Of a stretch of 64,000 nt of DNA, positions 7,293-62,049 are shown one piece after another. Positions within the stretch are counted from its first letter, which is position 1; every line of letters starts with the position of its first letter. The notes under the pieces are model-generated. The model was given only the letters and a program-made list of their open reading frames with translations, had not been told where the DNA came from and did not search any database. Source of the DNA: Sminthopsis crassicaudata. Lineage: Eukaryota. Where the stretch lies: positions 77,088,937-77,152,936 of the forward strand of contig NC_133617.1 of assembly GCF_048593235.1 (NCBI RefSeq). Direction: 5' to 3'. Both the position numbers and the translations under genes were made by a program.

Positions 7293-7687
7293 ATGCGTCC
7301 GCTGGTGTTCCTGTGTGCCCAGCAGGTGATCAAAGATGAGGAATCTGCATGCCAGGCCTTGGAGCTTCTGCCACAGGACCTATACCCAGTCCTATTCAAG
7401 GCAGCCTTCATGCATGGGAAGACACTCTTGCTCCAGGCTTTGGTGCATACGTGGCCCTACCCCATCCTCAGTTTCAAGCAATTATTGCAGGATCGGCCAC
7501 ACTGCCGCAGGGCTCTGAGGCAGGACTGGCCACACTGTCTTCGGGCCCTTCTCCAGGAGTGTCCAAATTGCCCCCGTGCCCTGCTTCAAGACCGGCCTGC
7601 AGAGGAGCTGGTACAGGCAATGATCATGGGAGTCAAGGCTCGGCTGGAAGAAGCAACAGATAATGGAACCCAGCAGTCGCTCTATAG
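7293..7687 (+). CDS. LRRC14: LRRC14-like paralogue A (PRAME/LRRC14 family), coding exon 1 of 3; full CDS join(7293..7687,9014..9637,10304..10871), 528 aa
   Basis: ATG at 7293 gives MRPLVFLCAQQV..LPQDLYPVLFKAAFMHGK..VHTWPYPILSF, matching the LRRC14 N-terminus (BC-box/Cul2-box-like). Splice acceptor ttttcttcctggcag|g at 7243 lies upstream; donor AG|gtaaat at 7687/7688 (phase 2). The symbol denotes the family; which copy is the true orthologue is unresolved. Confidence 0.9.
7491..7589 (+). repeat. Coding tandem repeat, 3 x 33 bp (11 aa)
   Basis: DRPHCRRALRQ / DWPHCLRALLQ / ECPNCPRALLQ at 7491, 7524 and 7557. Confidence 0.9.
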
Positions 7688-9013
7688 GTAAATGCCTAAT
7701 TGCTGTTCACCTGAGGTAAGAAGTTGATAATAGCTGGAGAGGCAGTCAGGACCTCAGCTCACAAGAGAGAATCTTTTCAGAACCCATAGTATCTTAGAAA
7801 CAACAGCAGAAGGGGAGAGTCCTGACAACACCATTTATTGAGTGCCTGCTCTTTAGAGATCAGGGCCAGGACCTTGTTAAAGGACATAGTTAAGCACATT
7901 TCCTAAAGTAGCAAATGTTCCAAGTTAGGAAAAAGAGGCTGCTTAGATTTTTTGTTAGACTGTTATGATCTATGGGCCTCTAGCAAGGAGGTTGAAAATT
8001 CATTCCTTCAAGAGCTGCCTGGGATTTATTAGGAAGTGCCTACTAAGAGAATAATCATTGAGAAGTAGGTCCCCACAGCTATTTTTAGGCTAAATTATGA
8101 CCCTAGAGCCAGTCTAATGATATCTAAAGATATCACTAGCCCAGACTATAACTCAGGTGCTGTGGTAGCCAAAGGTTGTGACCCATTATTATGGCCTGTA
8201 TTGATGGAACAGCTTGATATTCTCCCTGTGAAATGAAAGAAAGGGGCAGCATTAACAGCAAAATGTCTACTCTGGTCAGACTTCCATTTTGTTTACATCC
8301 TAACTAAGGACATTGGCTCTGGAGTTTGTCAGAGTACAGGCAGGATGATGGGAGAGGGTTAGATTGCCATTCCTCATGAAACTTGCTGAGAATCCTAAAT
8401 ATTTAAGAGGGGCTGTTGAGGGAAAGATGAATGAGACTTGATCTAGGTTTGATCAGGAACAATGGAACAGTGGATATTAGTTGCAGAGAAACAGATTTTA
8501 GCTTGATTGCTAGGCTACTTGATTGATCATTACCTGTCCAAAACTAGACTGGCGGCTGCTCTTTCACTGGAACTTTTGTCCTTAATACAATAGTTGAATG
8601 TCTTAGTTTTTGTCAAACACTTGGCACTGTTACGGATTCACATGTTTCTGGTCTTGACGTATATCTTCTGTTCTATTTTCCAACCAAATTTTTTATTAAT
8701 AAGTTTGATTTGGTGATTCTAGGCCCCACTGATAATCTTTGAACAAAAGCTGGAAAAACACTTTTTGAATATATTATAGAGAAGATACTTTAGGCATAAA
8801 TTGGATTGACTTCTTAGGAGATCCCTCAGAATTGTGGCATTCTGTGATTGTATTTTACGCTTTTCACTCCCTTTTTCTCCTCTATTTTATCATAGTCTCA
8901 TTTAGTTCTTAAATTTGGTTATTTCCAGAATATGCTGGCTAAATTGGAATGCAATTAGCAGTATTTGGGGTATATTCTGGCACAGGATCTCACCTTCTCT
9001 GTCCATTTCTTAG

Positions 9014-9637
9014 GAGACATCCACTGCAGCTATTAGACATGACTGGACTTCTGGATTATGGCTATGAGGAAGACCTAAAAACTATGAAAATGTGGGCCCG
9101 TACCATGACCATGGCCCAAACAGGCATTTGCCACCTCTTGGACAAAGTCGAGCAGCCAAACGAAAGCCCCAACAAGTGCAGGAAGGTTGAGGACTTGCCA
9201 TGCACACTTCTCCCTGTGGAAGTGCGTGTAGATCTCTGGGTAACCCCTTCTTCCAGTGGCTTTCTGAAGCAGGCCCTGCAAAATAATGCTGTCAGCCCCC
9301 TGCGCTTGTGCTGCAGGGATTTCCGAGCTGAAGACCTCCCACCAGACATCACTGTGGATCTCCTGGGGCTGTTAGACCATTCCAGCTTACGCCGGTTAGA
9401 CCTGTCCTTCTTTACTTTAGAAGCAGGGGGTGTGTGGGAGATCGTAGCTTCCATTATGAAGTTTACTAATCTGCTGAGCTTGAAACTTCAGTACAGCAAC
9501 ATGGATGTGTGGCGACTCTGGGCCATGTTGGAAGGCACCTTTAGCTTCCTGGCTTCAGAGATGAGCAAGCTGAAACGCCTCAAGGAGCTTAATCTGGGCA
9601 CCTCTTGGCTTTCTGGCCAGCTGCGACAGCTGCTCAG
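9014..9637 (+). CDS. LRRC14: LRRC14-like paralogue A, coding exon 2
   Basis: Acceptor ccatttcttag|g at 9013 and donor AG|gtgagt at 9637. Length 624 bp keeps phase. Encodes RHPLQLLDMTGLLD..VEVRVDL..PLRLCCRDFRAEDLP..LKELNLGTSWLSGQLRQLL. Confidence 0.92.
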
Positions 9638-10303
9638 GTGAGTGAGTCTCTTATTCATTTACCTACCCTTGCTCCCAGTAACTGGTCAGGATCCTTAGTG
9701 AAAAGAAGCTTATGGTGAAAGGGAGCTCTGAATGAAGCTCACAAACAGGAACTGTTCAGCTTGAGAGAAATATACTCTCAAATATTTGTCTGAAGATCCC
9801 CTTCCTTTTCTTTGTTTAAATCTAAATTTCTTTTGCTTTTATGAACCTGTTAAGAGTAAAAGAACTATAGAAGACCTGTTCTCAAATCCTTGCCCTAGAA
9901 TTTCTGCTGTTCTGCTGTTCAACTTTGGATAATTGAGTTAACCTGGGGAAAGTGGAAAGGGGGTGATAGTTGATATTCTAGCTTCCTCTTAGAACCAATG
10001 TGAGGAAAACTCTAAACAATGAAGAGACTAGGAGAGTGAGTGTTTCTGTCATTATGCAGAGACAAAATGGCATGTTCCATGGTTCTGTTCCCTGTCTTAA
10101 AGTTTTGCAACTTCTCTCCTGTATGTGCTTTTCCTCACCATGGACCTTGGACAAAACTTGCCCCTTTCAGCCAGGAATAAAGTATCGCTTGGCCAGCTGG
10201 CACTGAAGAACAAGCTCCAGGAAGATGGAGCACTAGCCCAGTTTCCTTGTGTTTATCCCATTTTTCCTGGAAAATAATAGCATTTCTGTGTGTCTCTTTG
10301 CAG

Positions 10304-10871
10304 TGGCCTACAGTGTCCCTTGGAAAGCCTGGAACTTCCCGTCTGCTATCTGCTCCCTGTGGACTTGAGCTACTTGTCCCAGAGTCCCCATGCTCCCCAC
10401 CTCAAGAAACTAGACCTCAGTGGCAACAACCTGTCAGGTGACCTCTTGCCCCCCTTCCAGGCACTCTTGGGGGAGGCCTCGGCCTCCTTGCTGTGTCTGA
10501 AGGTGACAGAGTGCCAGCTTATGGACGTTCACCTCATCAGCACCCTGCCCCTTCTGTCCCGCTGCACCCGCCTGCGGTATCTTGGTCTCTATGACAATCC
10601 CCTTTCCAGCATTGGGCTAAAGGCCTTATTGTCGCGCTCCGAGGTCATGCCTGACCTCCAGCTGGTAGTGTACCCGTTTCCTGTGGACTGCTACAAGGAC
10701 CTGCCTGGGGTGCCCCTGTCTGCTAACCTCTTGGAGGACTATATCGATGAGGAGAAATTTGCTCAGGTTCAGGGAGAGATGCACCAGATGCTGATAGCAG
10801 CAGGTCGGGCTGATGTGCTGTGGACCACCGATGTCTATGGCCCAAATATGCCCGACTACTTTAGCTTGTGA
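10304..10871 (+). CDS. LRRC14: LRRC14-like paralogue A, coding exon 3 (LRRs, C-terminus DYFSL)
   Basis: Acceptor tctctttgcag|t at 10303. Encodes GLQCPLESLELP..HLKKLDLSGNNLSG..YPFPVDCY..WTTDVYG..DYFSL, with TGA at 10869-10871. Confidence 0.93.
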
Positions 10872-24089: not shown

Positions 24090-24960
24090 AAATGTCCATC
24101 ACACGTGCCCAAGACGAGGGACAGGGAGCCCTGGACAGGGGCGGAGCAGCCCAGGAAGCCAGGGCAGGCGTATCGCAGCCCGGAAACGCGGCAGGGAAAC
24201 AAGGAATCTTGAGGGACAGCTCCTTGGCCAACCACGAAGGGCGGCGCAACAAAGGGGCACCTGATAGCCAATCCTCTGTGAGCTCTCAGCTCCGACTTGT
24301 CTCCATCCAATGGAGTGTCAAAACGCCATCATCCAGTGCGATCGTCGCCCGCCTAGATTCCCGCGTCATGTTTTTGGCCGTTGGCTGTTGATTACTTCCA
24401 CTAAGAGGATGAGAGCGGGGTCGAGGGGCAGGGCTTGAGGGGCAGCCCCATAAGGGGCTGGGGCTGGCTTCCCTTGTCAGCTGCCCGGCCGCCTTTCCCC
24501 AGCTTTGGCTTCCGGACCTAAGCCTGCGCATAGCCCCTTTTCATTCACGCCTGCGCTGATAGGAAGGGGGAGGGGTTGGGCGCGGTGTGGGAGGCGCGCC
24601 TGCGTAGATAGAATCCCTTCCGCAGAGCCGCGCCTGCGCAGAGGTGCCAGGCTGGTTCCGCAGAAATGAAGTCGCTTTTGGCCTTGTGTGCTGTGCAGGT
24701 GACCCGGTACCAGACGTTGGCTTGCCGGGCTCTGGCTTCCCTGCCTCGGGAACTGTACCCGGTCTTATTCCGGGCCGCTTTCATAAACGGCCAAACGCTG
24801 GTGCTGCAAGCGCTAGTGCAGACGTGGCCCTTTCCGTGCCTGAGCTTCCGGCAGCTGCTCCCCCAGCCCAAGCAGATGGGCTGGCCCGAGAAGCCCCACA
24901 AGGAGAGTGTACAAGCCGTGATCTTGGCGCTGCTCGCGGCGCCGCGCAGGTAAGCCAAGC
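24090..24960 (+). promoter_or_regulatory. CpG-island promoter of LRRC14 paralogue B
   Basis: CCAAT at 24268 and 24307, E2F-like TTCCCGCG at 24358-24365, several NRF1-like GCCTGCGC motifs (e.g. 24522, 24630-24640), GC box near 24139. Confidence 0.75.
24666..24949 (+). CDS. LRRC14: LRRC14-like paralogue B, coding exon 1 of 3; full CDS join(24666..24949,26864..27481,28032..28599), 489 aa
   Basis: ATG at 24666 inside a CpG island gives MKSLLALCAVQV..LPRELYPVLFRAAF..VQTWPFPCLSF..ESVQAVILAL. Donor AG|gtaagc at 24949/24950 (phase 2). Confidence 0.9.
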
Positions 24961-25149
24961 TGGGACTACTCCCTGGCATGGGGAAGGGAACTATTCTTCC
25001 ACTGCAAGGCGCTGTGCGAAGAGCCCTGTAAATTTCTCTGTAGTAGAGAGGGATGTCACATACTCACACCAGAAAGCCTGCTTTTAGGGTCCGGAAAAAC
25101 CAGGGCAGTGGCCTCTGTCCACGGAGCAGATACACACCCACGTGTAATT

Positions 25150-25245
25150 TATTTTTTGGTGAGGCAATTGGGGTTGTGTCTTGCCTAGGGTCACACTTTT
25201 GAACTCGGGTTCTTCCGAATCATTATGCTACGTAGCTGCTCCCTC
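25150..25245 (-). mobile_element. Degenerate WSINE1-like SINE
   Basis: tttttggtgaggcaattggggtt..cttgcctagggtcacac..gaactcggg..gtagctgctccc. Confidence 0.55.
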
Positions 25246-25934
25246 ACGGAATATATTTGATAAATGATCCTTGAAAGAACCTACTAGAGGGGCAAAACAG
25301 GAATTGCGTGGAACTGATGTCATGTGCTAGCCCCTGGAGCCTTCCGGTTCAGACTCTGAAGGGTCAGGGGTGGTTTTGCCTGTGGCTGCAGAAGGGGGTG
25401 GTCACTTTGGCCTTTGGTTTGGAAGCTTCATGCCTCTAATAAGCTCTCTTACGTGGGGTAACTGAGGTATCTGCGCAAATTATCTAAAAGGCTTGTCATT
25501 CCTGAGGTATGTCTCATACTTCTATCTGTGCTTTTCAGGAGGGAATCTAGCAGCATGTAGGGGTCTGACCAACATTCCTTTTTCATGGGGATGAAAGGAG
25601 GAAAGAAAGGGAAAGGGAGCCTGACTTGGGACTGCCAAATTAGGGACTGAACCAGGGCAGAACCCTAGGTCTTCCTTAAGGGTATCATTGCCTAGCTTCT
25701 TAAAATTTGGTTGGTGACCTCATATGGAGGTCTCATAACTGAATGTGGGAGTTGTGAAATTAAGATTTATCAGGAAATGCTTTATATATGTTTTATATAT
25801 CTTTCTTCCTCAGGTCACATAAAAACTATTGGGGTTGTGAGTGGATTTAAGTTTTAAGAAGTCCCGATCTGTTTACTTGTGGAGGTCTTCTAATTGGAGA
25901 GGAAATTAGGGAGATCTTTTTTTCCACCTATATA

Positions 25935-26165
25935 ATAGTTGGCATTTATATGGAGCTTTGAGGTTTGAAAAGCACTTTACATGTTAACTCCTTGAATCCT
26001 CCCAATTACTCTGTAAAGTAGATGCTTATCCCCATTTTTACAGATAAGAAAACTCTGGCAGATAGAAGTTGATTCAAACAGGGTCACCCAGCTAAGTGTC
26101 AGGAAGCTTTTCAAAATTCAGGTCTTCCTAATTCCAAGTTCTGTGTTTTATTCTTTGTATCACCT
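25935..26165 (-). mobile_element. MIR SINE
   Basis: aagcactttacat..ccccattttacagataagaaaact..gggtcacccagctaagtgtc. Confidence 0.7.
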
Positions 26166-26863
26166 ATCTCTAAATCCTTTGGTGTTGTGGCCTTAAAAAA
26201 TCTATGAATCAACTCACTTCACCAAAGACATATCAGTCCAACCATAACTTACATAATAACGTGAAGGATTAATTTTTAGATGACAGCCTGGAAGCAAGGT
26301 CCAGTTAGGTTGAAAGAATCCATGGAAGCTTGGGTCGTGGTAATGGTTGTGGAGGAAGGGATCAAGATTTTGTGGAGATAGACATGGTTAGGACCTGGCA
26401 ACTAATTAAACCTGAGGAATTGTGGAACTGGACATCACTGACAAGTTTATTGGTATTTATGCTGCCTTGAGGATGACTGAGGTGTAGCCACATCCCTTAT
26501 TTGGTTAGTTTGTCTTTATTTCTAAAGGTTTTTACATACCTTCTTCTCCCTTTTTAGGGATCTGGCTATCAAATGGAGGATGGAAAAAGCTTTAAGGAAA
26601 GGAAGGGGTTAGATCTAGAATCCTGAATGCAATGAAAAAGGCAGGCAAGATGTGACTGACCCAGGGATCTACACATCTAGACAGTAGTGGGAAAGTTTTA
26701 AGTACTGAGAACAGGACCTTGAGCTAGAGAGATATTTGAGGAAAAAGGCTAGTTAGGCCTGGAACCCCAAAGCCCTGATCTTCCCCCAGGACATCTGCCA
26801 GCCCCAATTTTCTGTCCAGAGTGAGCTGTCCAGGTCATGGTCACAGCCTTTTTCTCCTTGCAG

Positions 26864-27481
26864 GAAGCCTCATCTTCGAGTGTTGGACATGACTGGTTTC
26901 CTGGATGCCAGCTGTGGGCAGGACCCTACGACCATGAGCATGTGGGCTCGCTCAGTGGCGGTGGCAAGGACTTGTCTCAGTGCCCAGACTCAAGCTAGGG
27001 CAGCTCAACGCTTAGCCAAACGCCGCAAACTGGAGCCTCAAGTCCCTGTTGCTAGTCCTGTGGAAGTGCACACTGACCTGCTAGTGAACCGAACTTCTTA
27101 CAGTGTCCTGAAGGAGGCTCTCCTGACCAGCACTTGTGGTCCCCTTCGCCTTCGCTGCAGGGACCTTTGGGCTGAGGAACTGTCAGGTCCTAGCACTGTA
27201 GCTCTCTTGGAGCTGCTGGATCCAGTGTGCCTGCGCCAGATAGACCTACGCTTCAACAACTTGGGACTTTCAGGCCTGTGTATGGTCGTGCCCCACATGG
27301 CCAAGTTCACCCACTTGTTGAGCCTGAAGCTACAATACAGTAATGTGGATGTGCGGCGGCTCACCACTGAAGCTGAGGGCAGCTTCCAACACTTTGTTTC
27401 CGCGATTGGACAGCTGAAATGCCTCAAGGAACTCAACATGGGCTCCTCTCGACTCTCAGGCCGCCTTCATCAGCTCCTTAG
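26864..27481 (+). CDS. LRRC14: LRRC14-like paralogue B, coding exon 2
   Basis: Acceptor tttctccttgcag|g at 26863 and donor AG|gtgagt at 27481; 618 bp. Encodes KPHLRVLDMTGFLD..TMSMW..DLRFNNLGLSGL..LKELNMGSSRLSGRLHQLL. Confidence 0.93.
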
Positions 27482-28031
27482 GTGAGTGGGCCTAGGTTTC
27501 CCCAAACAATAGATTTTTTTTTATCATCTATGGGAGAGGCACATAAGAGGCCCAATGAGTAGAGCTGCAATTTGACATTTACTGTATTGTTTACTCTGCA
27601 TTTTCGGTAAGTACTTGGGGCACTTGTTAGGGTAAAAACAACCCCAAGTAGAAGTTTTAGTGTTTGGGGAAGAGGAAAATGATTAACACTGTAGGAAAAG
27701 GGAAATAAAATCCCCAGGGTATACAGCTTGGGAGGGAGAATTGGGTAAGGACAAAGTGGCCTAGGCTTGGGAAGGGGGGGGAGGTGTCAGCACAACAGGA
27801 GGGGTTAAAATCCTTATGAGGAATGCTAGAATGGCATATACATGCCTTTTCCCCCTAAAGCTGTATTTTTCTAGGACCAGTGAGCTGACAAAGTAGAGGG
27901 TCTTAGAAACTCTAATGGCTGGAGTCAGAGTGTAAAAGAATTTTAGCTTGGTGCAGCCACGAGGGCCTGTATATCTATCTTGGTTTGTTGAACTATTAAA
28001 ATGACCAGTGCCTATATATATTTCTCTGCAG

Positions 28032-28599
28032 CGGCCTACAGGGCCCTCTGGAAAGCCTGGAACTTCCCTTTTGTGCCCTTCTTTCTGGGGACTTGAGTTA
28101 CTTGGCCCAGAGCCCCCATGCCACCCATCTCAAGAAGCTGGATCTCAGTGGCAACAAACTGTCTGGTGACCTCCTGGGCCCCTTTCAGAAACTTCTAAGG
28201 GAAGCCTCAGCTTCCCTGATATGTCTGGATGTTACAGAGTGCCAGCTCATGGATGTCCATCTTGTTACTATCTTGCCCACCCTATGCTCCTGTACCCACC
28301 TCCGCTACATTGGTCTCTATGGTAACCCTATTGCTAGTGCTGGACTGAAAACCTTGATCCAACACTTACAGGCCTTGCCTGAGCTTCAGCTGGTGGTACA
28401 CCCAGTCCCTGTGGATTGCTATAAGGACCTGCCCTGGCCACCATCTTCAGCCAGTCTCCTAGAGGGTACTGTGGATGAAGAGAAACTTGCCAATGTGCAG
28501 GCTGAGCTGCAGCAGTTGATAGAGTCCATACAGCGCCGTGATGTGATGTGGACCATGGACATCTATGGCCACAACAGTTTTGACTACTTCAGCCTGTAG
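28032..28599 (+). CDS. LRRC14: LRRC14-like paralogue B, coding exon 3
   Basis: Acceptor tttctctgcag|c at 28031. Encodes GLQGPLESLELPFC..HLKKLDLSGN..PVDCYKDLPWPP..DIYG..DYFSL, with TAG at 28597-28599. Confidence 0.93.
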
Positions 28600-28614
28600 A
28601 AGAATGTTTGTATC

Positions 28615-28618
<4 letters not shown>

Positions 28619-28666
<48 letters not shown>
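28619..28666. repeat. Compound (TG)n(TA)n microsatellite in the 3' UTR of paralogue B
   Basis: Direct reading; starts 20 nt after the stop codon. Confidence 0.97.
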
Positions 28667-28955
28667 GGGAATGGGAGAGGAGTGCAGGGAAAGAGAGGCA
28701 GTATATGTCTACTTTGCTACTGATGCAAAAGACCATCCCAAGGTGGCAAGTGAGTGCCTCTTGCTCTGAGTTTTGGCAGAACCAGAATGGGCTACCTACT
28801 CCGTATGTGCTCCTAGATGGGATTGTGTGTTGAGGGTTATAGATTTTTCTATGCCCCTGTCCATGATGGACATGACATTGTGGTTTTTCTAGGCCCTGAA
28901 ATTCAACTTTAGAGGGGAGGAAGGCCACCCTTTTCCTGGGGGTGGGGATGGGGTA

Positions 28956-28961
28956 TTTATT
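28956..28961 (-). terminator. Poly(A) signal AATAAA, probably of the F-box gene
   Basis: tttatt on + about 340 nt downstream of the F-box stop; the first canonical hexamer I found. Confidence 0.55.
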
Positions 28962-29075
28962 TGTAATTCTAGGACCCACGAGTCATTCATTGTACAAAAC
29001 CTGAACTTTTTGGTCCACGACCCCTTCAGTCCACCCCACCACCTGTCACAGACGATCACAGACCACAACATGAAG

Positions 29076-29081
29076 AATAAA
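29076..29081 (+). terminator. Poly(A) signal AATAAA, probably of LRRC14 paralogue B
   Basis: First AATAAA I found on + after the TAG at 28599. Confidence 0.55.
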
Positions 29082-29296
29082 GGCAATACCAATGTAAAGG
29101 TGTCCTCCATTACAAACAGTCCCCAAGAACCCAACCAACCTCCCCTGTTCGGCATTTCCTCCCCGACCCCACTTCCCACTCCAACTTGGCGCTTTTTTTG
29201 AGGGATGGGGGTAACAACTGATTTCCCTACTGTTTGGTGGGCCCATATACCCTGAGAGCTAAGAACATAGGGGAAGGGGGGACCTCCCAGACTCCC

Positions 29297-30433
29297 TCAT
29301 AGGAGCCAGGTATCTGAGTGGCGGGTACAATAGCAGGCCTGGAGTAATAAGGCATGTAGTTCCTTATAGGCCTGCTCCCGCCAGTGAGGCAGCAGGATCT
29401 GGTTATTGAGGACTCTCAGATTGGGAGTCCCCCGGCACAGAAGTGTGTAGAGGCAAGCCCAGCGGCTCTGCAGGGCCAGGCGAGTGCGGCAGTTGAGGAT
29501 AATGCCCCGGACTGTCTTCTTCACACGAAGGGCTTTAAGTGCTGGCAGGTCAAGGTGGCGGAAGACTAGGCCCCGGCTCTGAGACACATCTAGAGTTTCC
29601 AGGGATCGGGACTCGAGTGCATAGGATACACCCAGGTCCTTGACTGGCACAAGTACGTGCAGGACCAGGGTCTTGAGGTTGGGCAGGGCCTTGGTCAGTT
29701 CCTGCATGGTGTCTGGGCACACCCCCTTAAAGCTCCAGAAGTATTTGAGCTCCAAGGTGTGGAGCTGCTGGAAGCGCGTCAGCAGCGCCACTGATCGGGC
29801 GGACCAGTCGAAAGGGAGCTTGGCCCTGCTAAGGCGAGGTGCCCGGACCAGCAGCCTCTCCAGCAGCATCTGGAAGTTGTGGATCTGATCCAGCTTGGTG
29901 AGGCTCACCTGGGTCATGCTGCACGTGCCCGGTGGGTAGAAGTCGGGGGGCTCCAGGTGCGTCAGGGTCCAGTTGAGCTCCAGGTCCCGCAGATCTCCAC
30001 AGTGGACACCCTCCAGGAAGCCAGAGAGGAAGTCGGCCCAGCGGGCCCCCTGGTCAGCCAGATCAAAGCTGGCCCGGAGTCGCAGCAGGCTGGCTCCGCG
30101 GGCCATGAGGTGGTAGGCATACTGGTGCACCCAGTCCTTCCAGCGCTCAAACTCTCGTGCCGACACCAGCACCACCTCGAGGCCGGATTGGAAGGCGCCC
30201 AGCCGCATGAAGTCGGCAGTGCGCCACAGGCGGGGTGTGCGCATCAGCTGGCTCCAAGCGCGGCACACCTCGGCCGCCGTGCACTTCTCCGCCTCCGTCA
30301 GGAAGGAGAAGATGTGCAGCTGGCAGTCCACCGGCAGAAGGCCGAACGGGAAGACGCTACGCCTGCTGGCCCGGCCTTCCTCCCGGCCAGGGACTCCCCG
30401 AACGCCGCCTCGCCGCCGCCGTTTCCGGGGCAT
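29297..30433 (-). CDS. Unnamed F-box protein with LRR-like C-terminal region (FBXL-type SCF substrate receptor), single coding exon, 378 aa
   Basis: Uninterrupted ORF. The first ATG after the splice acceptor at 30470 is at 30433 (MPRKRRRR, NLS-like). F-box motif LLPVDCQLHIFSFLTEAEKCTAAEVCRAWSQL..LW, followed by LxxLxL repeats (LRDLEL, LHTLELKY, LKTLVL, LETLDVS, LKALRV). Ends CYCTRHSDTWLL. AATAAA on - at 28956-28961. Confidence 0.88.
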   Translation of the reverse strand: MPRKRRRRGGVRGVPGREEGRASRRSVFPFGLLPVDCQLHIFSFLTEAEKCTAAEVCRAWSQLMRTPRLWRTADFMRLGAFQSGLEVVLVSAREFERWKDWVHQYAYHLMARGASLLRLRASFDLADQGARWADFLSGFLEGVHCGDLRDLELNWTLTHLEPPDFYPPGTCSMTQVSLTKLDQIHNFQMLLERLLVRAPRLSRAKLPFDWSARSVALLTRFQQLHTLELKYFWSFKGVCPDTMQELTKALPNLKTLVLHVLVPVKDLGVSYALESRSLETLDVSQSRGLVFRHLDLPALKALRVKKTVRGIILNCRTRLALQSRWACLYTLLCRGTPNLRVLNNQILLPHWREQAYKELHALLLQACYCTRHSDTWLL

Positions 30434-31160
30434 CGCTCCAGCCGAAGCTTCCCGCGGCTCGGCGGGGTCCTGAGATGGGGCATGGTGGGAGTGAGGGAGC
30501 GCCGGGAGCCTAGCCCAACGGCCCGCGGCCGGCTGAGGCCCAGCCCCAAGATCCGCCCCTGAGCCCCGCCCCCTGGTCTCTTCCCCTTGACCCCGCCCCG
30601 ACCCCGCCCCTCCCCCTCCCGAGGCCTGGGCCCGTCGCTCCACCTCCAGCACAGCCTACCTCTGAGGGAGTGGATCCCACCCCTCAGCCTAAGGCCCGCC
30701 TCACCATGGGAACACCGCGGCCGGCCCCTCCCTCCGGCCGGCCGGCCCTCCATCCCAGCTACCCCTTACCTGGTAGTTCCGGGCACGGGCGATGCCTTTT
30801 TTCTGTCGCGGCGCCAGCCTAGCGCGTCTCAGAAACCGCCAGAAGAGGGAGGAAGGAGCCAGGTTGGCTCTCTTCAGGAGTCACCAGTCGGCGCGCGCAC
30901 TCTGTCGGCTCTCACTTCGGAGCAGACGAGTTCGCAGCCTAGAGTGCCACCTTCCCGCCCTCTTCTGACGGAAGTGACGTAAAGCCGGAGACTAGGGAGT
31001 CTCTAAGACTGAGAAGGGTAGTGTGAAAATCTCCCTGGCGGGGTTGGGGGGGGGGGGGAAAGAACTCGGCCAAGAGGTGATGCGATTCCCACCCATTTGG
31101 GCGTCCTCGGCGCGCCCTTCGTTAACTCCGGCTCATAGCCGAGGCCACTAGGGGGCGCTG
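30100..31160 (-). promoter_or_regulatory. CpG-island promoter of the F-box gene with ETS-CRE composite motif
   Basis: CpG-dense. CGGAAGTGACGT at 30969-30980 and an E2F-like TTCCCGCC near 30952. Confidence 0.7.
30770..30950 (-). other. Non-coding 5' exon of the F-box gene (300-bp intron 30470..30769)
   Basis: On the minus strand: donor CCAG|gtaagg at 30770/30769 and acceptor catctcag|GACC at 30470/30469. No ATG seen in the exon. The upstream boundary (TSS) is approximate. Confidence 0.65.
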
Positions 31161-31345
31161 TGAATAGAGCACGGGACTTGCAGTCAGGAAGACCTGAGTT
31201 CTAATTCAGCTTCACATCTGGACTCACATGATCTTAGGCTGATCATTTCTCTTCTGCTTTAGTTCCTTTATCTATAAAATGGGAATAATCCTGCCTCACA
31301 GGATTCTGAGGATAAAATATTTGTAAAGTCCTTAGCAAAGTAGGT
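31155..31345 (+). mobile_element. MIR SINE
   Basis: gacttgcagtcaggaagacctgagttctaattc..ctataaaatgggaataat..ttgtaaagt. Confidence 0.7.
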
Positions 31346-31840: not shown

Positions 31841-32799
31841 TCAGCAGTGGATTTCATAGGCAATCTGTGACTGGAACAAGAGACCCTGGTCTTGGAGGGG
31901 CTCGGAGCTGGGGACCAGGCCTGGGCGCCCGGTGGGCGGTCCTTCCCCGCTCTCCTCATAGGTCGGGAAGAGAGGCTTGTTTCGGTTGATGACGAACATC
32001 TCGTGGCCCCGCTCGTCCCGGTACTCTTCCAGCTGGGCAAAGGTGGTGGGCCCGTCCGAGTAATCATTGACGTAGAGGACGCTCTCCTCCTGTTTGGCTT
32101 TTTTCCTCTTTCGGTGCTTCCTGCAGATCATGACGGTCAGCAGCAGGGCCGTGAGGGCCAGCAGGGAGATGCCGGCGGCTATGGCCGTCTGCGTGGCGGC
32201 GCCCAACGCGCGGAAGTCCATGCTGCCCGCCTCGTAGAGGGGCTCCCGGCTGACGGCTCCCGAGGCGGGGGGCGGGGGCCGCGGCGGTTGCTGCTGGGAC
32301 AGGTTCACCAGCAGTTGGAAGGGCACCCGAGTGCTGCCCCCCGGGTTGCTGGCTTCGCACTCATATTTTCCAGCGTGGGCCATGGTGATGTTGGTGAGGG
32401 AGAGCATCCCACTGCCCGTGTCTGAGGCCAGGTGCTCCCCTAAGCTTCCCTCGCTCCCCCCCAGGGGCCCGCCCACCGAGCGCACGCTGGCTCTAGGCAG
32501 CCCCAGCCGGGACTGGGCCACCTTCCTCCAAGTGACCAGAGGCTGGGGGTAGCCGGAGGCCTGGCAGGAGACCCGCAGGTCATCCCCGAGCCGGGCAGTA
32601 GCCTCCACTGGCTCCACGTGCACTGTAGGGGGGATGCAGATGAGGCTGTTGCCCGAGATGTCCAGGAGGCTCTGATGGGCCAGACGTGGGGGCTCGGAAC
32701 ACACAATCTTCTTGTCCAGAGAGCTCAGGAGCCTCTGCCCTCCTTCCTTGATCCAGGCCCCAAGCCAGTGCAGAGCGCAGTCACAGCGCCAGGGGTTCT
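31841..32799 (-). CDS. LRRC24: LRRC24 coding exon 4 (LRRCT, Ig-like domain, TM helix, cytoplasmic tail)
   Basis: ENPWRCDC..CQASGYPQPLVTW..AGKYECEASN..TAIAAGISLLALTALLLTVMIC..ERGHEMFVINR..AYEIHC; TGA at 31841-31843. Confidence 0.96.
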
Positions 32800-33875
32800 C
32801 TGAGGGGAAAGGTCAGAGGAGTTGACTCCCCCACCCCCCCAAATCCCCATTCATACATGGAGTCCTGCTGCCCTCCCTCCCTTCCCCCCCACTCCGGTCT
32901 TTCCTGACCCACCCACTCTCCTCTAAGACCAGCGAAAACATCTCACCATTGATAAAAACCAAGCCAGGCAAGAGCTGGTGCCCTGACCATCTTCACTCTT
33001 ATCCCAGCATCCCCCCCGCTCACAACCTTCTCTGAGACTGTTCCCCTACTCTGTCCCACTGAACCAGGACCCCCAGTGCCCAGCAGCCTGGCATGGTGCC
33101 TCGGGCTGCGCCAGAAAGGCCAGACAGTGACCCTGTCTGAGAACTGGGCACATTCTCACACAATATGGGGCCTTGGGGTGGCAGGGCTGGGCTGCTCCAC
33201 TTGGACTTTCCCATTGTCTCATCTTAGCATGGGAGAATCCAGTTTGTAAAAGGATGGAGAGTCTTCCTGACTTTGTTCTTTGAGGGGTAGACCGCATCCC
33301 CAACACCCTTATTATCCTTTTAGACTTCAGGGATCCCTTGGGGTCATAGCTGCGACTCAAATCCAATTAAGTGTCTCCCTGTCCATTTGGGGGCCCAGCT
33401 CTGCCATGCCCAACAGAAAACAGTGTGGGGTACAATGTAGCTGGTCTGAGGAGCTAGGCTTGGCTACCTGTTTAACTTTGTTTTGGCAAGTCACATAGTT
33501 GGTGTTTTTTGTGGGCGCTAAAAATGGAGATATGTCTTAGCTTCTCCCTCTGTAAAAAGAGGGGCCTGGACTAAGCTCCTAGCCAGGGCTCCTTTTAGCT
33601 CTAAATCTCATATTCTCTAACCTGTGGGGCTTCCTTTCCCAAAGTTGTTGGAAGGGACTGTCCTCATTTTCCCCTTCATATTCAAAGTGTCACACAAGAG
33701 GACGTTATTATCGTTAGTGAGTTCAGTCTTGGCTCCTTCATGTCTGTATGTGTGCCCATTTTGTGGTTTGTGAACTTTGTGCTAGGAATGGTGGGTGTGC
33801 AGGAGTGTGGGACAGGGAGAATGGCTGGGCCCTGCCCACTCCCCTGCAGCACGGCCCCCTGCCCTTATACAGTAC

Positions 33876-34044
33876 CTGTGAGGCGTAGGACTTGCAGACT
33901 GGCCAGGGGGACCAGGGCATCTCGACTGATGGTACTCAGCTGGTTCTTGCTAAGGTCAAGCAGAGCCAGGGAGGAGAGGCCAGCCAGGGCCTGGTCTTCC
34001 AGCAGTTCAATACTGTTTTCCTGCAGATGCAGCTCCTGCAGCCT
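33876..34044 (-). CDS. LRRC24: LRRC24 coding exon 3 (LRRs)
   Basis: RLQELHLQENSIELLEDQALAGLSSLALLDLSKNQL..LQVLRLT; tttcag| and G|gtact boundaries; 169 bp (phase 1). Confidence 0.95.
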
Positions 34045-35173
34045 CTGAAATGGAGGGGAAAGACCATGGAAGGAAGGAAGCTCAACAAGGAAAGCAGCTG
34101 GGATAGTCTTCAGCAGCTCTACAGTTCTTCCTCCCCTTCTAGAAAATTCTTGGGGACTCCTGATAGGCAGTGGTGCTGGGGCCTTTTCACTGCTCAGGAC
34201 TAAGTGTGGCATGGTCAACAGGCTACAAACCTTCTGAGGACTTGGACAGCGTGATTTGGAGTCAGAGGATTGTGCTTTTAACCCTGGCATTGCTTTAGTG
34301 GTCAATGTGACTGTAAGGAAGTTACTTAACCAGTCTAGATTTCAGGTGCCTAATCTTTAAAGGGAGGAGGTTACCCTGGATGGCCTCAGAGTTGCCACCA
34401 TGAACACCAGTGCTCTTCTCTCGGCACATTCTGGTTTTCTGGGGCTCCTTTTGCCAATCAAGTAAAATTTAAGCTGCTTCTTAGTGTTTTCCCCTTAAGA
34501 AAAGGCACTTTACCTCAGCCTCCATTTCCTTATCTGGATTATCTGAATAGGATTAGTATTTTTATTGCTTTCCCAGGGTTATCATGAGAATCAAATGAAA
34601 CTACACAGAAGCCATCCCAGCACTAGCAAACAGACAAACATTTGTCCATTTATATGTTGTATCCCTTCTAAAAGCATAGGAGTTTTTGTGTTTTATATAC
34701 CCATTGGCCACCAGTACCATGCCCAGTGTGACCCTTCTCTGTATGCTTTCCTCATGTCCCCAGTCAATTCTGCCCTTGGGCCTGACCCTGTACTTTGTTT
34801 TCTGCCTCTGGCTCACTTTTCATGTCCTAATTTAAATTATGTTTATCTCAGGTTTCTTTCCTTATGGACATGGTGGCTTTTTTGGACTTTGGATCTCCTC
34901 TGGGAATTAGCAGGTGATTAATAGATGTAAACAAATAAATTGAGTTGAATTCCTCTGGCTCTGGTTGGAGCAGTGACTCATTAGATTCCCAGAACACTTA
35001 CCCTCATGGCCACCTACTTCCAAGTTGGTTGAGTGCCTGCTAAGGCTGTCCTGCCTCATTGCTGCCCTCCAGCCAGGCAGGGATGGGCAGGCCTTAGGCC
35101 TCTCCCTAATGGAGTTGAGGAGGAGGGATGCTTTTCAGAGCTGGGCCTGGCTGGGGAACCATGTGATGCTCAC

Positions 35174-35452
35174 CGGCAAATAGCAAAAGGTGAAGTCAAG
35201 GAGCCGTGTGATCTGATTCCCTGCCAGGTAGAGCACCCGAAGGTGGTCCAGGCCCTTGAAGATGCTGCTGTTGAGCAGGTGAATGCGGTTCCGGTTGAGG
35301 GCTAACTCCAGAAGTTGCTGCTGGCCAAGGAAGGCGCCCGGCTCTAAGGCCCACAGGCTGTTGTTCTGCATGTAGAGGTACTGCAGGCCTGAGAGTGGGG
35401 CCAGGTCTGCCTGGTGGATCTGAGTAATGCTGTTATCCTGCAGGAACACTGT
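35174..35452 (-). CDS. LRRC24: LRRC24 coding exon 2 (LRRs)
   Basis: TVFLQDNSI..LRVLYLAGNQITRLLDFTFCYLP; cccag| and |gtgagc boundaries; 279 bp. Confidence 0.95.
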
Positions 35453-35795
35453 CTGGGAAGGACACACACACATCAGAGTCAAGCTTGGGATCCCTGCTCA
35501 GGCTGGGAATAGGAGAAGCGAGGGACGCCCAGTGAGGGAAGACAGAATCAGTCACCTCCTCCAGAGGTTCCAGGCCTCCTCAGTAAAAAGAGGATAATTT
35601 TTGCATTCTATAACTCAAAGGACTATTGTGAAGAAAGTACTTTGTAAACATTACAAGTCCCATGAGAAAGGAAATTATTGTCATATACGGTTACTGCCTT
35701 CATATTCCTAGGCTGGGCTCTACTTATTCCCCAGAGATCTATGGACCGGGTCCAGCCTTCCCTGGTGAGGAAAGCCTCGAGGTCCACTCCTGTAC

Positions 35796-35960
35796 CTGAG
35801 TGATGGGTGGAATCCCAGGCGGAACGTGCTGTAGGCTCAGTGAACCGCATTCCACAGTCATGCTGTAGCAGCGACAGCCGGTGGGGCAGCCCTGGCCCCT
35901 GAGCAGCAGGAGGCTCAGGATGGGGAGGAGGCTGGCCAGCATGGACTCCCCCAAGGCCAT
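35796..35960 (-). CDS. LRRC24: LRRC24 coding exon 1 (signal peptide, LRRNT); full CDS complement(join(31841..32799,33876..34044,35174..35452,35796..35960)), 523 aa
   Basis: MALGESMLASLLPILSLLLLRGQGCPTGCRCYSMTVECG..GIPPITQ. Acceptor tctctgacag| at 35971 upstream of the ATG; donor CAG|gtaca at 35796. Confidence 0.93.
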
Positions 35961-51298: not shown

Positions 51299-54200
51299 AT
51301 ATACAAAAATATGCATGCTGGAAACAAATGGTATATTAAGTATACAAAACAAAAGAAAAAGATACTAAATAAAATAAATGTTTTAAATGTAAATACTCAA
51401 ACAAAATGCACAATATTTATGCGGAAAAACAAAGTATTTAAAGAAATGTATATTTCAAATAAAATGTCAATAATGCTAAATAAAAACATACTAACTTCTA
51501 AATGCTTGTAAATCAAGAATCACTATCAGTAGGAAACAAATGAAACCCAACAATCATAGACATTTTTAAAGGATTATCTTGGGAAAAGTACTGGCAATAC
51601 TAACTGATACAAGATAAAACCTTTAAGCCCCTGGCAAATGTTTTTTTTTTTTTTTTTAATATATAAATGTTTTGGGTCCTATTCACAAAGTATCTTCCCT
51701 CTCATTTCATTCTCTCTTTTCTTCAATGAGTGCATAGTTTCTTAAAATTTTTTTGACTCTTGTCCTGTAAATTGATGGGGTAAATTGACATGTGCAATTT
51801 TACAAGAATGATGATCACCTGGTCCTCTCTTCTCTCTACTGTAAAAGGAGGCAGCTGACTTATACAGATAAATACAGTAACAGACTATCTGCAGGTGGAT
51901 TGCTTTCACCCAATATTCTCTCACATGAGGAGGGGTCATTAATTACATTCTGGTTCACTCCTTGAGCAGCTGGCATGAAGTTGCATCAAAGCCCTGGCTT
52001 TTCCTTTATCATACAGTTTCAGGCTTTCAGGTTAAAGCAGGAGAACAATTGTATTTGGTCTTAAATCTATTACTCATCAGAAAGCACCTCACAGCTCAGT
52101 GCAGCTCAGAATAAGGCAATGGGTGAGGATGGAAGGAGGGGAGGAGAGGATGAATTTGGGCAGAGATGCTGATCATTAGCACTCTGCAGATTGGATGACT
52201 TTCCAAGGGTGAGTCAGAGACAAGGTTATGGGGAATAGATATATGTATGATGAGTTCTTTTTGCAGCCTGAGTTTTTGTCCTCTATATTAATACTCTCTT
52301 CTCTGACAGGCAGTCCTAAGGAGGTCATTCCCTCCACAATGAAAAGTTTAAGGGACGATATAGTTGTTAGGTCAAAACCTTCTGGGTCCTGTAGATGTCA
52401 GTCTCTTCGGCTGTCACTCTGACTTCTTTCCCTGGCAGAGAATCCATTAATCCTGAATTTTGAGACTGCAAACTCAAAAATAGTCAGGAGCCTCATAATG
52501 TCATCTGCTTTGTTGACATTCTTTCTGCACAAGGAACCTTTCTGGCTAAATCAGAAAGTACAGCACGACTTGGAGCAATGAACCACATAAAGTAATGAGA
52601 AAAAATACAGTAGGGTAAACAACCCTGCAGGGTTCAGGGGTTCTTGCCTCATGATGCATCTATTGATTACTCCTGAGTCGCAGGTTGCATTTTATGGAGT
52701 ATCCCACATAATTTGAGCATTTAACGTTGATTATGGCTCCTGTTGGTCCTGTCTCACCAACAGGAATATAAGCTGGCAAAGTCTAGCAAGAGAGTTATAT
52801 GGTCATATGGATGGTTATAGTTTCCAGCATATGTGATTTATATGACTGAAATCACTAGAAGAGCCCAGCGTAGTCCTACTGATTTATGCTCTAAAGGAAT
52901 TTTTGACTGAAACAAATAAACATGTCTATACTCCCTTGACTTCCTGAAGGATCAATATAACCACGATTCTCCTTTTCTCCAATTTCATATGCGTCACAGA
53001 AACCCTTTCATTAACCCTTTTTACTAACCTGCCCTCGATTCTTCTTCTTGACCTTCCAAATCTTTTCCTAGCCCCCTAAAAATAATAGTTCTCCGTAGAC
53101 CATAATCTGAGCAGAAGAAGGAGCCTCTGGGCACTACAGAGAGGCAGCAGAGTCCTAGTCTCACTTGTAATGGGTAGGTACTTAGTATGACTAGGTAGTA
53201 CACTTCTCTCAGGGCTTTAGTTTCCCCATGATGGGATTGAAATAAACCCTTTCAGCTCTAAATTAAATCCTAAATTATTAATTAAAATGCAATTTCTGGT
53301 CACATTTGGAAGGTCTGACAAAAAGAAAGGCTGTACACCAGGATTGTCCTTGGAGTCAAGGGCTTTTATATGTTGATCTGAATATGGGTCTTCAGATTTG
53401 CCCATGGGCTTCTGGATGAGAGCTTTCAACCGCACAGCAAATTTCAATTACCATACAAGTCAGGGGAACAGGTAAAACTCCAACATAGTGCCTACCAGCT
53501 GTCTGGCTGACAACCTGCTTCACAGGAGGCTATTTGCCTAGCACTAGCCATTCCTGTAAATCCAGACCACGTCACTGACAAGTCCCGGTAGAGCTTTAGC
53601 ATCTGAAAGAAACCAACCTCTGGCACTCTTGACTCCTCCTACCTTTTCTGAACCAACCATATTTAATTAGCCCCTAGAATCCTGGGGGTAATTTACTACA
53701 AGAAACACCCTGAGTCCCTGCCCCCCCAGTTTGCTAGTCTAGAATCTCTGACATAGCCAAACTTTTGGATGGTCCCTGGAATAGAGGGAAGAGACTTGTT
53801 CTGTTTGGCTCTTGAGGCTCAAACCGAGCACAATATAAATTGCAAACAAGAAAATTTAGGCTCTGTATATTGAAAACCAAACAATATGAGCTATCCAAAA
53901 GGGGACTGTGCTTCCTGGGGACATATTGGACTCCCCCTCGTTGGAAGTGGTCGAGTAAAGGTTAAATGACATTTATTGGCTAGGATGTAGAGGGGAATTC
54001 TTGTTCTGCACAAGTTGGAAGTAAATGGCCTCTGGGATTCTTCCAACTCTTAGTTCCTGAAGGAGACACAAAAGGGGGCAGCAGCCAACAGCCCCGCCTC
54101 TCTAAAAGCCATTTGGATACAAAATCCAGGGCGTATAGAAAGTAGCAGTCTGTCAGGACACCTGATGGACTCCTGAGATAACCCTGGGGACCAAAGCCTG

Positions 54201-60768: not shown

Positions 60769-61214
60769 TCAGGGCCCACAGGATTTAGGAAAGAGGGATG
60801 CAAGGTCCATGGTTAGGGGATATTTCTGGCCTTGCCACAAGATATGGGTGGGCAGGGTGGCCCCTCCTGGTGGGTACTGGAAGCAGCTACTGAGCTCAAA
60901 GGCCAGGGAAGAGCGGACCAGCCCCACACCACCAGCCAGTTTGGGTGCTGGGTGATAGAGACGTCCGTTGGCAGGGAGGGGCATCAGTCGGGCAGGTTCG
61001 AAGGGTACAGCCAGGGCCTCTCCCCCTCCCCCATAGGAGAGGCGTGCGGGTCCCGGACCATCTTCCAGTAGGTGTGTGAAGACCACGGGGAGATCGTCAC
61101 AGCGCACAAAATTGCGTTCACGGCCACAAAGCGAGACAAAGGGAAAGGCATCTTCATAGCGACCACTTTGGTTCTTCCTCAGGCGGGAGAAGAAAAAGAC
61201 CAGGAACTGTCGGT
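60769..61214 (-). CDS. C8orf82: C8orf82 coding exon 3
   Basis: DRQFLVFFFSRLR..CGRERNFVRCDDLPVVFTHLL..GGVGLVRSSLAFELS; TGA at 60769-60771. Confidence 0.94.
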
Positions 61215-61962: not shown

Positions 61963-62011
61963 CTTTGAAACAGGTGATAAAATTCTTCACTTTAGCATCA
62001 TCCAGGAAAAG
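61963..62011 (-). CDS. C8orf82: C8orf82 coding exon 2
   Basis: LFLDDAKVKNFITCFK; ctgcag| and G|gtacc boundaries; 49 bp (phase 1). Confidence 0.92.
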
Positions 62012-62049
62012 CTGCAGGACAGGCAGGAGAGAGACAGAGAAAGAGGGGT

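What the first reader, a model, noticed from the sequence alone, without database searches (positions are those of the whole stretch)
29297..30433. Intact, unnamed F-box/LRR gene between LRRC14 and LRRC24, where human has no gene
Seen in sequence: a 378-aa stop-free ORF with an N-terminal basic NLS-like motif (PRKRRRR), a clear F-box (LPVDCQLHIFSFL..AAEVCRAWSQL..LW), several LxxLxL repeats and a C-terminal CYCTRH motif. It has its own CpG-island promoter, a spliced non-coding 5' exon and an AATAAA, so it looks like a live gene rather than a dead retrocopy. Established: F-box proteins recruit substrates to SKP1-CUL1 ligases. From memory, human LRRC14 and LRRC24 are directly adjacent, and this protein does not match FBXL6 or other FBXL proteins I recognise. 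Inference: either an ancient SCF receptor lost in eutherians or a marsupial gain, nuclear and with an unknown substrate. The terminal Cys/His cluster could bind a metal.
Basis: partly seen in the sequence, partly recalled or inferred. Interest (0 to 1): 0.85.

Follow-up and report, generated by a model that had tools for sequence, protein, structure and literature searches.

The report
Ancient F-box gene lost in placentals
This marsupial has an intact, transcribed and strongly conserved F-box/leucine-rich-repeat gene between LRRC14 and LRRC24; it is an ancient, unstudied animal gene (zebrafish si:dkey-12e7.1) that no placental mammal in the protein searches carries and that echidna keeps only as a wreck.

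Summary
A 378-codon ORF lies on the minus strand (ATG 30433, stop 29299-29297). It has a Pfam F-box, a basic N-terminus, a predicted LRR solenoid and a terminal CxCxxH. A CpG island, an AATAAA and a non-coding 5' exon are present, and RNA contigs from three runs show that exon spliced on.

It is not a marsupial gain. Full-length orthologues occur in sharks, ray-finned fishes, coelacanth, lungfish, amphibians, turtles, alligator, tuatara, birds and ten marsupials, all named "uncharacterized". Relatives at about 30% identity occur in molluscs, annelids, brachiopods and echinoderms. The gene tree follows the species tree. The position between LRRC24 and LRRC14 is shared with alligator, and in a shark the gene lies 6 kb from a PRAME/LRRC14-type gene. 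Marsupial dN/dS is 0.02-0.07.

No eutherian, monotreme or squamate protein was found, although the same search with neighbouring LRRC24 finds all three groups. In elephant the LRRC24-LRRC14 gap is 1.1 kb with no trace of the gene. Echidna keeps a decayed relic at the syntenic spot.

The best reading is an orphan FBXL-type SCF substrate receptor, probably nuclear, with an invariant Cys3-His site that probably binds metal. The substrate is unknown. No human FBXL or FBXO protein is its counterpart, and no paper was found. The scan had not noted it before.

The parts
29297..30433 (-). Complete coding sequence, 378 codons plus stop, in a single coding exon
   Evidence: identical gene structure (gene span = CDS length) in Antechinus, Dromiciops, alligator, shark and toad
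30770..31007 (-). Non-coding exon 1. The 3' end at 30770 is exact; the 5' end is approximate (contigs end at 30944, 31007, or run on). It holds no ATG.
30470..30769 (-). 300-nt intron in the 5' UTR, GT..AG on the minus strand
   Evidence: joint in RNA contigs of runs X5, X9 and X11; same junction in Monodelphis RNA contig L001; sequence
30434..30469 (-). 5' UTR part of exon 2 (36 nt), with G at -3 of the ATG
30200..31200 (.). CpG island over the promoter, exon 1, the intron and the start of the CDS
   Evidence: GC 0.60-0.755, CpG observed/expected 0.6-0.94 in 200-nt bins
30410..30430 (-). Basic N-terminal motif PRKRRRR (residues 2-8), NLS-like. A basic cluster is kept in sharks, coelacanth, lungfish, turtles and alligator, and is weaker in amphibians and teleosts.
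   Evidence: alignment A1; function inferred
30212..30340 (-). F-box (residues 32-74)
   Evidence: Pfam PF12937 E=5.6e-11 and PF00646 E=2.3e-7; aligns to the F-box of SKP1-bound FBXL17, FBXL5, FBXL3 and SKP2; L33, P34, L45, V56, C57, W60 and W70 are 91-99% conserved in 164 family members
29336..30166 (-). Irregular LRR-like solenoid (residues about 90-366; about ten short beta strands alternating with helices). The most conserved block is residues 201-310.
   Evidence: AF2 model, pLDDT 84, pTM 0.81; VIA Z 13.8 to FBXL17, 13.4 FBXL2, 12.8 KDM2B, 11.5 SKP2; regional identities
29318..29335 (-). C-terminal CxCxxH (C367, C369, H372), the hallmark of the family
   Evidence: present in nearly every full-length hit of the exhaustive profile search
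29453..29455 (-). Codon of C327, the invariant fourth candidate metal ligand
   Evidence: 164 of 164 family members, and this residue was not used to select them
28956..28961 (-). Poly(A) signal AATAAA of the F-box gene, giving a 3' UTR of about 340 nt
24666..28599 (+). Convergent neighbour of the PRAME/LRRC14 family (LRRC14 position). Its AATAAA at 29076 puts its 3' UTR tail to tail over that of the F-box gene.
   Evidence: PRAME_N/PRAME_C in the orthologous neighbour of 6 marsupials, alligator, elephant and echidna
31841..35940 (-). Upstream neighbour LRRC24 (LRR_8 exons, LRRCT, Ig, TM). Its last exon is 31841-32799.

Best explanation
This is a functional protein-coding gene, the marsupial orthologue of zebrafish si:dkey-12e7.1 and of the many 'uncharacterized LOC' genes of other vertebrates. 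It belongs to an unnamed F-box family that predates vertebrates. The protein has the FBXL architecture: an F-box directly followed by an irregular leucine-rich-repeat solenoid. It most likely works as the substrate receptor of an SKP1-CUL1-RBX1 (SCF) ubiquitin ligase. In that reading the F-box docks on SKP1, the highly conserved central repeats (residues 201-310) hold the substrate, the basic N-terminus takes the protein to the nucleus, and the invariant C327 plus C367-x-C369-x2-H372 hold a metal ion, most likely structural zinc, that fastens the C-terminal cap to the last repeats. The gene stood beside a PRAME/LRRC14-family gene in the jawed-vertebrate ancestor and between LRRC24 and LRRC14 in the amniote ancestor. 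Marsupials keep it under strong purifying selection. Eutherians have lost it, and elephant shows no trace. Monotremes lost it independently, and echidna keeps a relic. Shown here: gene integrity, splicing, conservation, orthology, synteny, F-box and fold class, and the pattern of presence and absence. Inferred: SKP1/CUL1 binding, nuclear location, metal binding, and the substrate, which is unknown.
For: The ORF and its motifs are. Transcription with a GT..AG splice is seen in three runs and in Monodelphis. Three polymorphisms in the RNA contigs are all synonymous. dN/dS is 0.020-0.073 among four marsupials and 0.14-0.22 against alligator. There are 57 full-length orthologue clusters from sharks to marsupials at 55-97% identity, and ten marsupial species sit in one 90% cluster. 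The gene tree matches the species tree. The order LRRC24, F-box, LRRC14 is found in six marsupials and in alligator, where C8orf82 and RECQL4 flank it. In shark the gene lies 6 kb from a PRAME-family gene. The exhaustive profile search gives about 100 clusters at E<1e-30, including Owenia, Asterias, Pomacea, Capitella and Lingula. The model is confident (pLDDT 84), and its best structural matches are SKP1-bound FBXL17, FBXL2, KDM2B, KDM2A and SKP2. The F-box residues and C327/C367/C369/H372 are conserved family-wide. Loss: no eutherian, monotreme or squamate hit, while the LRRC24 control finds all three groups. The elephant gap is 1.1 kb without a remnant. The echidna relic scores E=9e-9 at the syntenic place.
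Against: No biochemical datum exists for any member of the family, and no paper was found. Pfam LRR models do not hit the protein, so the LRR assignment rests on the predicted structure. TM-scores to every named FBXL protein are below 0.5. Model coordinates could not be read, so the spatial closeness of the four Cys/His residues is untested. The NLS is a motif only and is weak in amphibians and teleosts. Eutherian loss was checked at DNA level in one species (elephant). The human and mouse intervals could not be examined with these tools.
Confidence: 0.75

Rival explanations
1. The protein binds SKP1 through its F-box but does not act mainly as a CUL1-dependent degradation receptor. Instead it serves as a scaffold in another nuclear complex, as KDM2B (FBXL10) does with SKP1 in PRC1.1.
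For: KDM2B and KDM2A F-box/LRR modules are among the best structural matches (Z 12.8 and 12.1). The N-terminus is basic and NLS-like.
Against: The protein has no further domain, such as a chromatin-binding one. At 378 aa it has the minimal receptor layout of SKP2 and FBXL2, whose SCF role is established.
Confidence: 0.15
2. The invariant Cys3-His site is not a passive zinc staple. It would instead be a sensing cofactor site, such as an iron-sulfur or redox-sensitive metal centre, that switches substrate binding, in analogy to the C-terminal cluster of FBXL5.
For: C327, C367, C369 and H372 are, with P297, the only fully invariant residues across 164 members. They lie in the C-terminal cap next to the most conserved repeats. 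FBXL5-SKP1 is among the structural and sequence hits. The FBXL5 cluster itself is recalled from memory.
Against: Cys3-His with CxCxxH spacing is typical of structural zinc. No sequence similarity to the FBXL5 C-terminus was seen beyond the F-box.
Confidence: 0.1
3. Eutherians still have the gene, either moved elsewhere or so diverged that it carries a known FBXL or FBXO name.
For: Only one eutherian locus was read at DNA level. FBXL6 lies in the same human chromosome band (from memory) and is a middling structural match.
Against: Two searches of 5.8 billion protein clusters, and an exhaustive profile search, gave no eutherian member. The score falls from E=4e-68 to E=4e-5 (F-box only) outside the family. 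Identities to named FBXL proteins are 12-19%. The LRRC24 control shows that eutherians are well sampled.
Confidence: 0.03
4. The gene is a marsupial gain or a retrocopy of a multi-exon parent.
For: The CDS is intronless.
Against: The intronless CDS is shared with shark, toad and alligator. Orthologues in the same synteny predate mammals. The gene has its own spliced 5' exon.
Confidence: 0.01

Closest known systems
Zebrafish si:dkey-12e7.1 and the 'uncharacterized protein LOC...' genes of marsupials, reptiles, birds, amphibians and fishes (e.g. Monodelphis LOC100019770)
   Same: This is the same gene. Identity is 55-97% over the full length, the CDS is intronless, the F-box and the C...CxCxxH residues are the same, the gene tree equals the species tree, and synteny is conserved.
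   Different: Nothing differs in kind. None of these genes has a name, a paper or a tested function.
FBXL-class SCF receptors with solved SKP1 complexes: FBXL17, FBXL2, SKP2, FBXL3
   Same: An F-box is directly followed by an LRR solenoid. Z is 11.5-13.8 over 235-254 residues starting at the F-box. The F-box aligns by sequence at E=5e-10 to 1e-7.
   Different: Identity is only 12-23% and TM is below 0.5. The repeats are irregular and are not recognised by Pfam LRR models. The invariant C-terminal Cys3-His signature is specific to this family. No orthology to any of these proteins was found.
FBXL5 (iron-sensing F-box/LRR protein)
   Same: It is an F-box/LRR receptor in which Cys residues of the C-terminal LRR region hold a metal cofactor (from memory). 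The IRP2-FBXL5-SKP1 structure is among the hits.
   Different: FBXL5 has an N-terminal hemerythrin domain and is far longer. Only the F-box aligns by sequence. The ligand set and spacing here (C-x39-CxCxxH) differ.
KDM2A / KDM2B (FBXL11 / FBXL10)
   Same: The F-box/LRR module is structurally similar (Z 12.1-12.8), and these are nuclear proteins.
   Different: KDM2 proteins carry JmjC, CXXC and PHD domains, which are absent here.

Membership tests
F-box protein superfamily | An F-box motif of about 45 residues recognised by the Pfam models | tested here: met
   PF12937 scores 42.5 bits (cut-off 24.3) and PF00646 scores 30.9 bits (cut-off 20.5), at residues 32-74. The consensus positions are 91-99% conserved in the family.
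F-box protein superfamily | Binds SKP1 and, through it, CUL1-RBX1 | not testable with these tools
   Inferred from the F-box and from structural similarity to SKP1-bound FBXL proteins. No complex prediction or experiment was possible.
FBXL class (F-box plus leucine-rich repeats) | LRR domain C-terminal to the F-box, recognised by sequence models | tested here: not met
   No Pfam LRR family reaches E<=1. A profile search of the PDB aligns SKP2 over profile positions 43-337 only weakly (E=1.5e-7, driven by the F-box).
FBXL class (F-box plus leucine-rich repeats) | LRR solenoid fold following the F-box | tested here: met
   The AF2 model (pLDDT 84) has about ten strand/helix repeats. The best matches are FBXL17, FBXL2, KDM2B, SKP2 and plant TIR1/COI1/D3. 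The model is predicted, not solved.
A named human FBXL or FBXO orthologue group (FBXL6, FBXL18, FBXL3/21 and others) | Reciprocal best hit or clear sequence orthology to a human protein | tested here: not met
   There is no human or eutherian hit at E<=0.001 beyond the family. Identity to Swiss-Prot FBXL models is 12-19%.
si:dkey-12e7.1 orthologue group | Full-length similarity with a gene tree that follows the species tree | tested here: met
si:dkey-12e7.1 orthologue group | Conserved genomic position | tested here: met
   The gene lies between LRRC24 and the PRAME/LRRC14-family gene in six marsupials and alligator, and next to a PRAME-family gene in shark. Nothing was seen within 10 kb in the toad.
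si:dkey-12e7.1 orthologue group | Family signature: invariant Cys (C327) plus C-terminal CxCxxH | tested here: met
Zinc-binding Cys3-His site | Four ligands close in space and bound metal | not testable with these tools
   Only invariance and placement in the confident C-terminal cap are available.

The most novel reading that the evidence does not exclude
The family is a distinct, ancient class of metal-dependent F-box/LRR receptor that serves one conserved nuclear substrate or pathway. That pathway became dispensable or was replaced at least twice among amniotes (eutherians, monotremes) and possibly a third time in squamates, while it stayed under very strong constraint in marsupials, turtles, crocodilians, amphibians and fishes. 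Finding its substrate would expose a ubiquitin pathway that human and mouse biology cannot show.
Probability: 0.3. Interest if true: 0.65.

Novelty: new member of a known kind. Interest (0 to 1): 0.5.

Why it matters
F-box proteins decide which proteins an SCF ligase destroys. The human and mouse sets are treated as the reference catalogue. Here is a receptor that is older than vertebrates and as constrained as a housekeeping gene in the lineages that keep it (dN/dS 0.02-0.07, 60% identity between shark and marsupial). It is absent from the two model mammals, so it has never been studied.

Its repeated loss in eutherians and monotremes, and apparently in squamates, gives a natural experiment: whatever it regulates was rewired or dropped in those lineages. 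It can be studied directly in zebrafish, Xenopus, chicken relatives and Monodelphis. The invariant Cys3-His cap is a concrete structural hypothesis to test.

Tried and rejected
- **Neighbour naming:** Atlas feature searches returned only generic Ig and LRR clusters. LRRC24 was named by homology search instead. LRRC14 was identified by PRAME_N/PRAME_C and synteny.
- **Read laying:** I laid 28400-31200 instead.
- **Literature:** Searches for the zebrafish name, LOC numbers and F-box loss in mammals found nothing relevant.
- **Elephant remnant:** The best tblastn hit in the elephant gap (E=1.1, 33% identity) lies on the wrong strand, so I rejected it as chance. hmmsearch and blastn found nothing there.
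- **Missing DNA:** dN/dS therefore rests on four marsupials plus alligator.
- **Metal site:** Model coordinates are not exposed, so the geometry of the metal site could not be measured.
- **Invertebrate members:** Cluster look-ups of invertebrate hits mostly returned unnamed metagenome or Logan proteins. No named invertebrate member was found.
- **RECQL4:** It was not detected in the window by tblastx.
- **Retrocopy idea:** Rejected, because the intronless CDS is ancestral.

Full report
**Observation.** The stated span holds a 378-codon ORF, but on the minus strand. The ATG is at 30433 and the stop at 29299-29297. The plus-strand reading is full of stops. Pfam recognises an F-box at residues 32-74: F-box-like E=5.6e-11 at 42.5 bits against a cut-off of 24.3, and F-box E=2.3e-7.

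A CpG island covers about 30200-31200, with GC 60-75% and CpG observed/expected 0.6-0.94. AATAAA lies at 28961-28956 on the minus strand.

**Transcription and gene structure.** Public RNA runs of the same organism hold the locus. In three of the four runs laid, from three studies, the assembled contigs skip 300 bases. With the sequence this is a GT..AG intron at 30769-30470. It joins a non-coding exon 1 (about 31007-30770, no ATG) to exon 2 at 30469, 36 nt before the ATG. The fourth run holds an unspliced contig.

A Monodelphis RNA contig (L001) shows the same junction. Three variants seen in the RNA contigs within the CDS are all synonymous. The neighbouring gene's AATAAA at 29076 on the plus strand means the two 3' UTRs overlap tail to tail.

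**Orthologues.** A search of 5.8 billion protein clusters gave 57 hits.
- One 90% cluster holds ten marsupial species: Monodelphis, Gracilinanus, Dromiciops, Antechinus, Sarcophilus, Vombatus, Phascolarctos, Trichosurus, Petaurus and Notamacropus.
- Turtles, alligator and tuatara are 75-79% identical, and emu is 73%.
- Frogs and caecilians are 67-70%, and lungfish is 69%.
- Coelacanth, sharks and ray-finned fishes are 55-63%. Among these it is called si:dkey-12e7.1.
- Every name is "uncharacterized".

A maximum-likelihood tree reproduces the species tree. It places the unlabelled transcriptome hits among birds, amphibians and teleosts, and none is mammalian.

**Wider family.** An exhaustive profile search of 1.84 billion representatives found about 100 clusters at E<1e-30. 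Those that carry names are from an annelid, a starfish, a snail, Capitella and a brachiopod. The family therefore predates vertebrates.

**Selection.** Nei-Gojobori dN/dS between the window and Antechinus, Monodelphis and Dromiciops, and among those three, is 0.020-0.073. Against alligator it is 0.14-0.22. The window is closest to Antechinus (dS 0.12), so it comes from a dasyurid.

**Synteny.** The last exon of the upstream neighbour is LRRC24 by name, 93% identical to Monodelphis LRRC24. The convergent neighbour belongs to the PRAME_N/PRAME_C family and aligns with the gene in the LRRC14 position of alligator and elephant.

The order LRRC24, F-box, LRRC14 is seen in six marsupials. In alligator it is flanked by a DUF4505 gene (C8orf82) and a RECQL4-type helicase. 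In catshark the F-box gene lies 6 kb from a PRAME-family gene. In every genome the gene span equals the CDS length, so the intronless CDS is ancestral and not a retrocopy.

**Loss.** Neither the single-sequence search nor the profile search returned any eutherian, monotreme or squamate protein. Outside the family the score drops from E=4e-68 to E=4e-5, which is F-box only. As a control, the same tool with the LRRC24 exon returned dozens of eutherians, echidna, and many lizards and snakes.

I then read two syntenic loci at DNA level.
- **Elephant (L006).** The order is ARHGAP39-type gene, C8orf82, LRRC24, LRRC14, RECQL4. The gap between the LRRC24 and LRRC14 coding ends is 1.1 kb. tblastn, profile hmmsearch and blastn find no credible remnant there; the best hit has E=1.1 and lies on the wrong strand.
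- **Echidna (L007).** The gap is 8.3 kb. It holds, in the expected orientation, a relic at 29482-29765.
  - Residues 223-263 align at 56% identity (tblastn E=9e-9; profile E=2.5e-4).
  - A DNA match to CDS nt 127-183 is joined almost directly to that block, which implies an internal deletion of about 560 nt.
  - There is no F-box integrity and no CxCxxH.

Because marsupials keep the gene, the monotreme and eutherian losses are independent. The human interval itself could not be examined with these tools.

**What the protein is.** AlphaFold2 with the orthologue alignment gives a confident model (pLDDT 84, pTM 0.81). It has three F-box helices followed by about ten strand/helix repeats and a helical C-terminal cap.

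The best structural matches are SKP1-bound F-box/LRR proteins: FBXL17 (Z 13.8), FBXL2 (13.4), KDM2B (12.8), KDM2A (12.1) and SKP2 (11.5). The plant proteins TIR1, COI1 and D3 also match.

No named protein is close. Identities are 12-19% to the Swiss-Prot FBXL models and 12-23% to the solved structures, TM is below 0.5, and Pfam LRR models do not fire. AFDB clusters show only the protein's own family above background. The protein is thus FBXL-like in architecture but an orphan family.

Conservation is highest in the F-box and in repeats 201-310. These show 72-73% identity to non-marsupial vertebrates and 53% and 34% identity to invertebrates.

**Metal site.** Nearly every full-length family member ends in CxCxxH. 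In 164 members chosen for that motif, C327 is also present in all 164, although it was not used for selection. Together with P297 these are the only fully invariant residues. This supports a Cys3-His metal site in the C-terminal cap. The geometry could not be checked because model coordinates are not exposed.

**Mechanism.** My reading is an SCF substrate receptor. The F-box docks on SKP1, the conserved central repeats bind the substrate, an N-terminal NLS directs it to the nucleus, and a zinc ion staples the cap. Only the domain identities and their conservation are shown. The binding partners, the location, the metal and the substrate are inferred.

The rivals are a non-degradative SKP1 scaffold as with KDM2B, a sensing cofactor as in FBXL5, a hidden eutherian orthologue, and a marsupial gain. 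The last two are essentially excluded.

**Novelty.** The gene is predicted in many genomes but is unnamed. It is a new, uncharacterised member of a known kind: an F-box/LRR receptor with a family-specific Cys3-His cap and an unusual pattern of repeated loss.

Noticed in passing
window 7260-10871 (+): A second PRAME/LRRC14-family gene lies about 14 kb upstream of the first. It has apparently intact ORFs in three exons laid out like the neighbour at 24666-28599, so it looks like a tandem paralogue. In some exons it matches alligator and elephant LRRC14 as well as the copy next to the F-box gene does.
   Followed up: partly
L007 (echidna) 29482-29765 (+): A decayed relic of the F-box gene lies between LRRC24 and LRRC14. 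About 45 codons are recognisable, there is a large internal deletion, and the signature motifs are gone.
   Followed up: yes
window 28940-29100: The 3' UTRs of the LRRC14-position gene (AATAAA at 29076, plus strand) and of the F-box gene (AATAAA at 28961-28956, minus strand) overlap tail to tail by about 150 nt, so convergent transcripts are complementary there.
   Followed up: no
window 28603-28677: A (TA)n(CA)n microsatellite starts directly after the stop codon of the LRRC14-position gene. All RNA contigs break there.
   Followed up: no
L001 (Monodelphis RNA contig) 2-197 vs window 52080-52305: The 5' end of the opossum transcript contig, upstream of exon 1, matches a window segment about 21 kb further upstream at 69% identity. 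It could be a distant alternative first exon, a shared repeat or a chimeric contig.
   Followed up: no
searches: No squamate orthologue of the F-box gene was returned, although tuatara has one and squamate LRRC24 is well represented. Neognath birds (duck and two unlabelled hits) sit on a very long branch (0.9) with deviant composition.
   Followed up: partly
window 36000-60800: About 25 kb separate LRRC24 from the C8orf82 (DUF4505) exons at 60805-63187. In elephant the gap is about 2.4 kb. The content of this stretch was not examined.
   Followed up: no
window 31045: Two RNA runs carry two extra G after 31045, in a homopolymer tract upstream of exon 1. This is a length polymorphism or an assembly difference.
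   Followed up: no
window 28678-31073, run X1: One 'RNA?' run holds an unspliced contig across the 5' UTR intron at the highest depth. This could be intron retention, nuclear RNA or DNA in the library.
   Followed up: no
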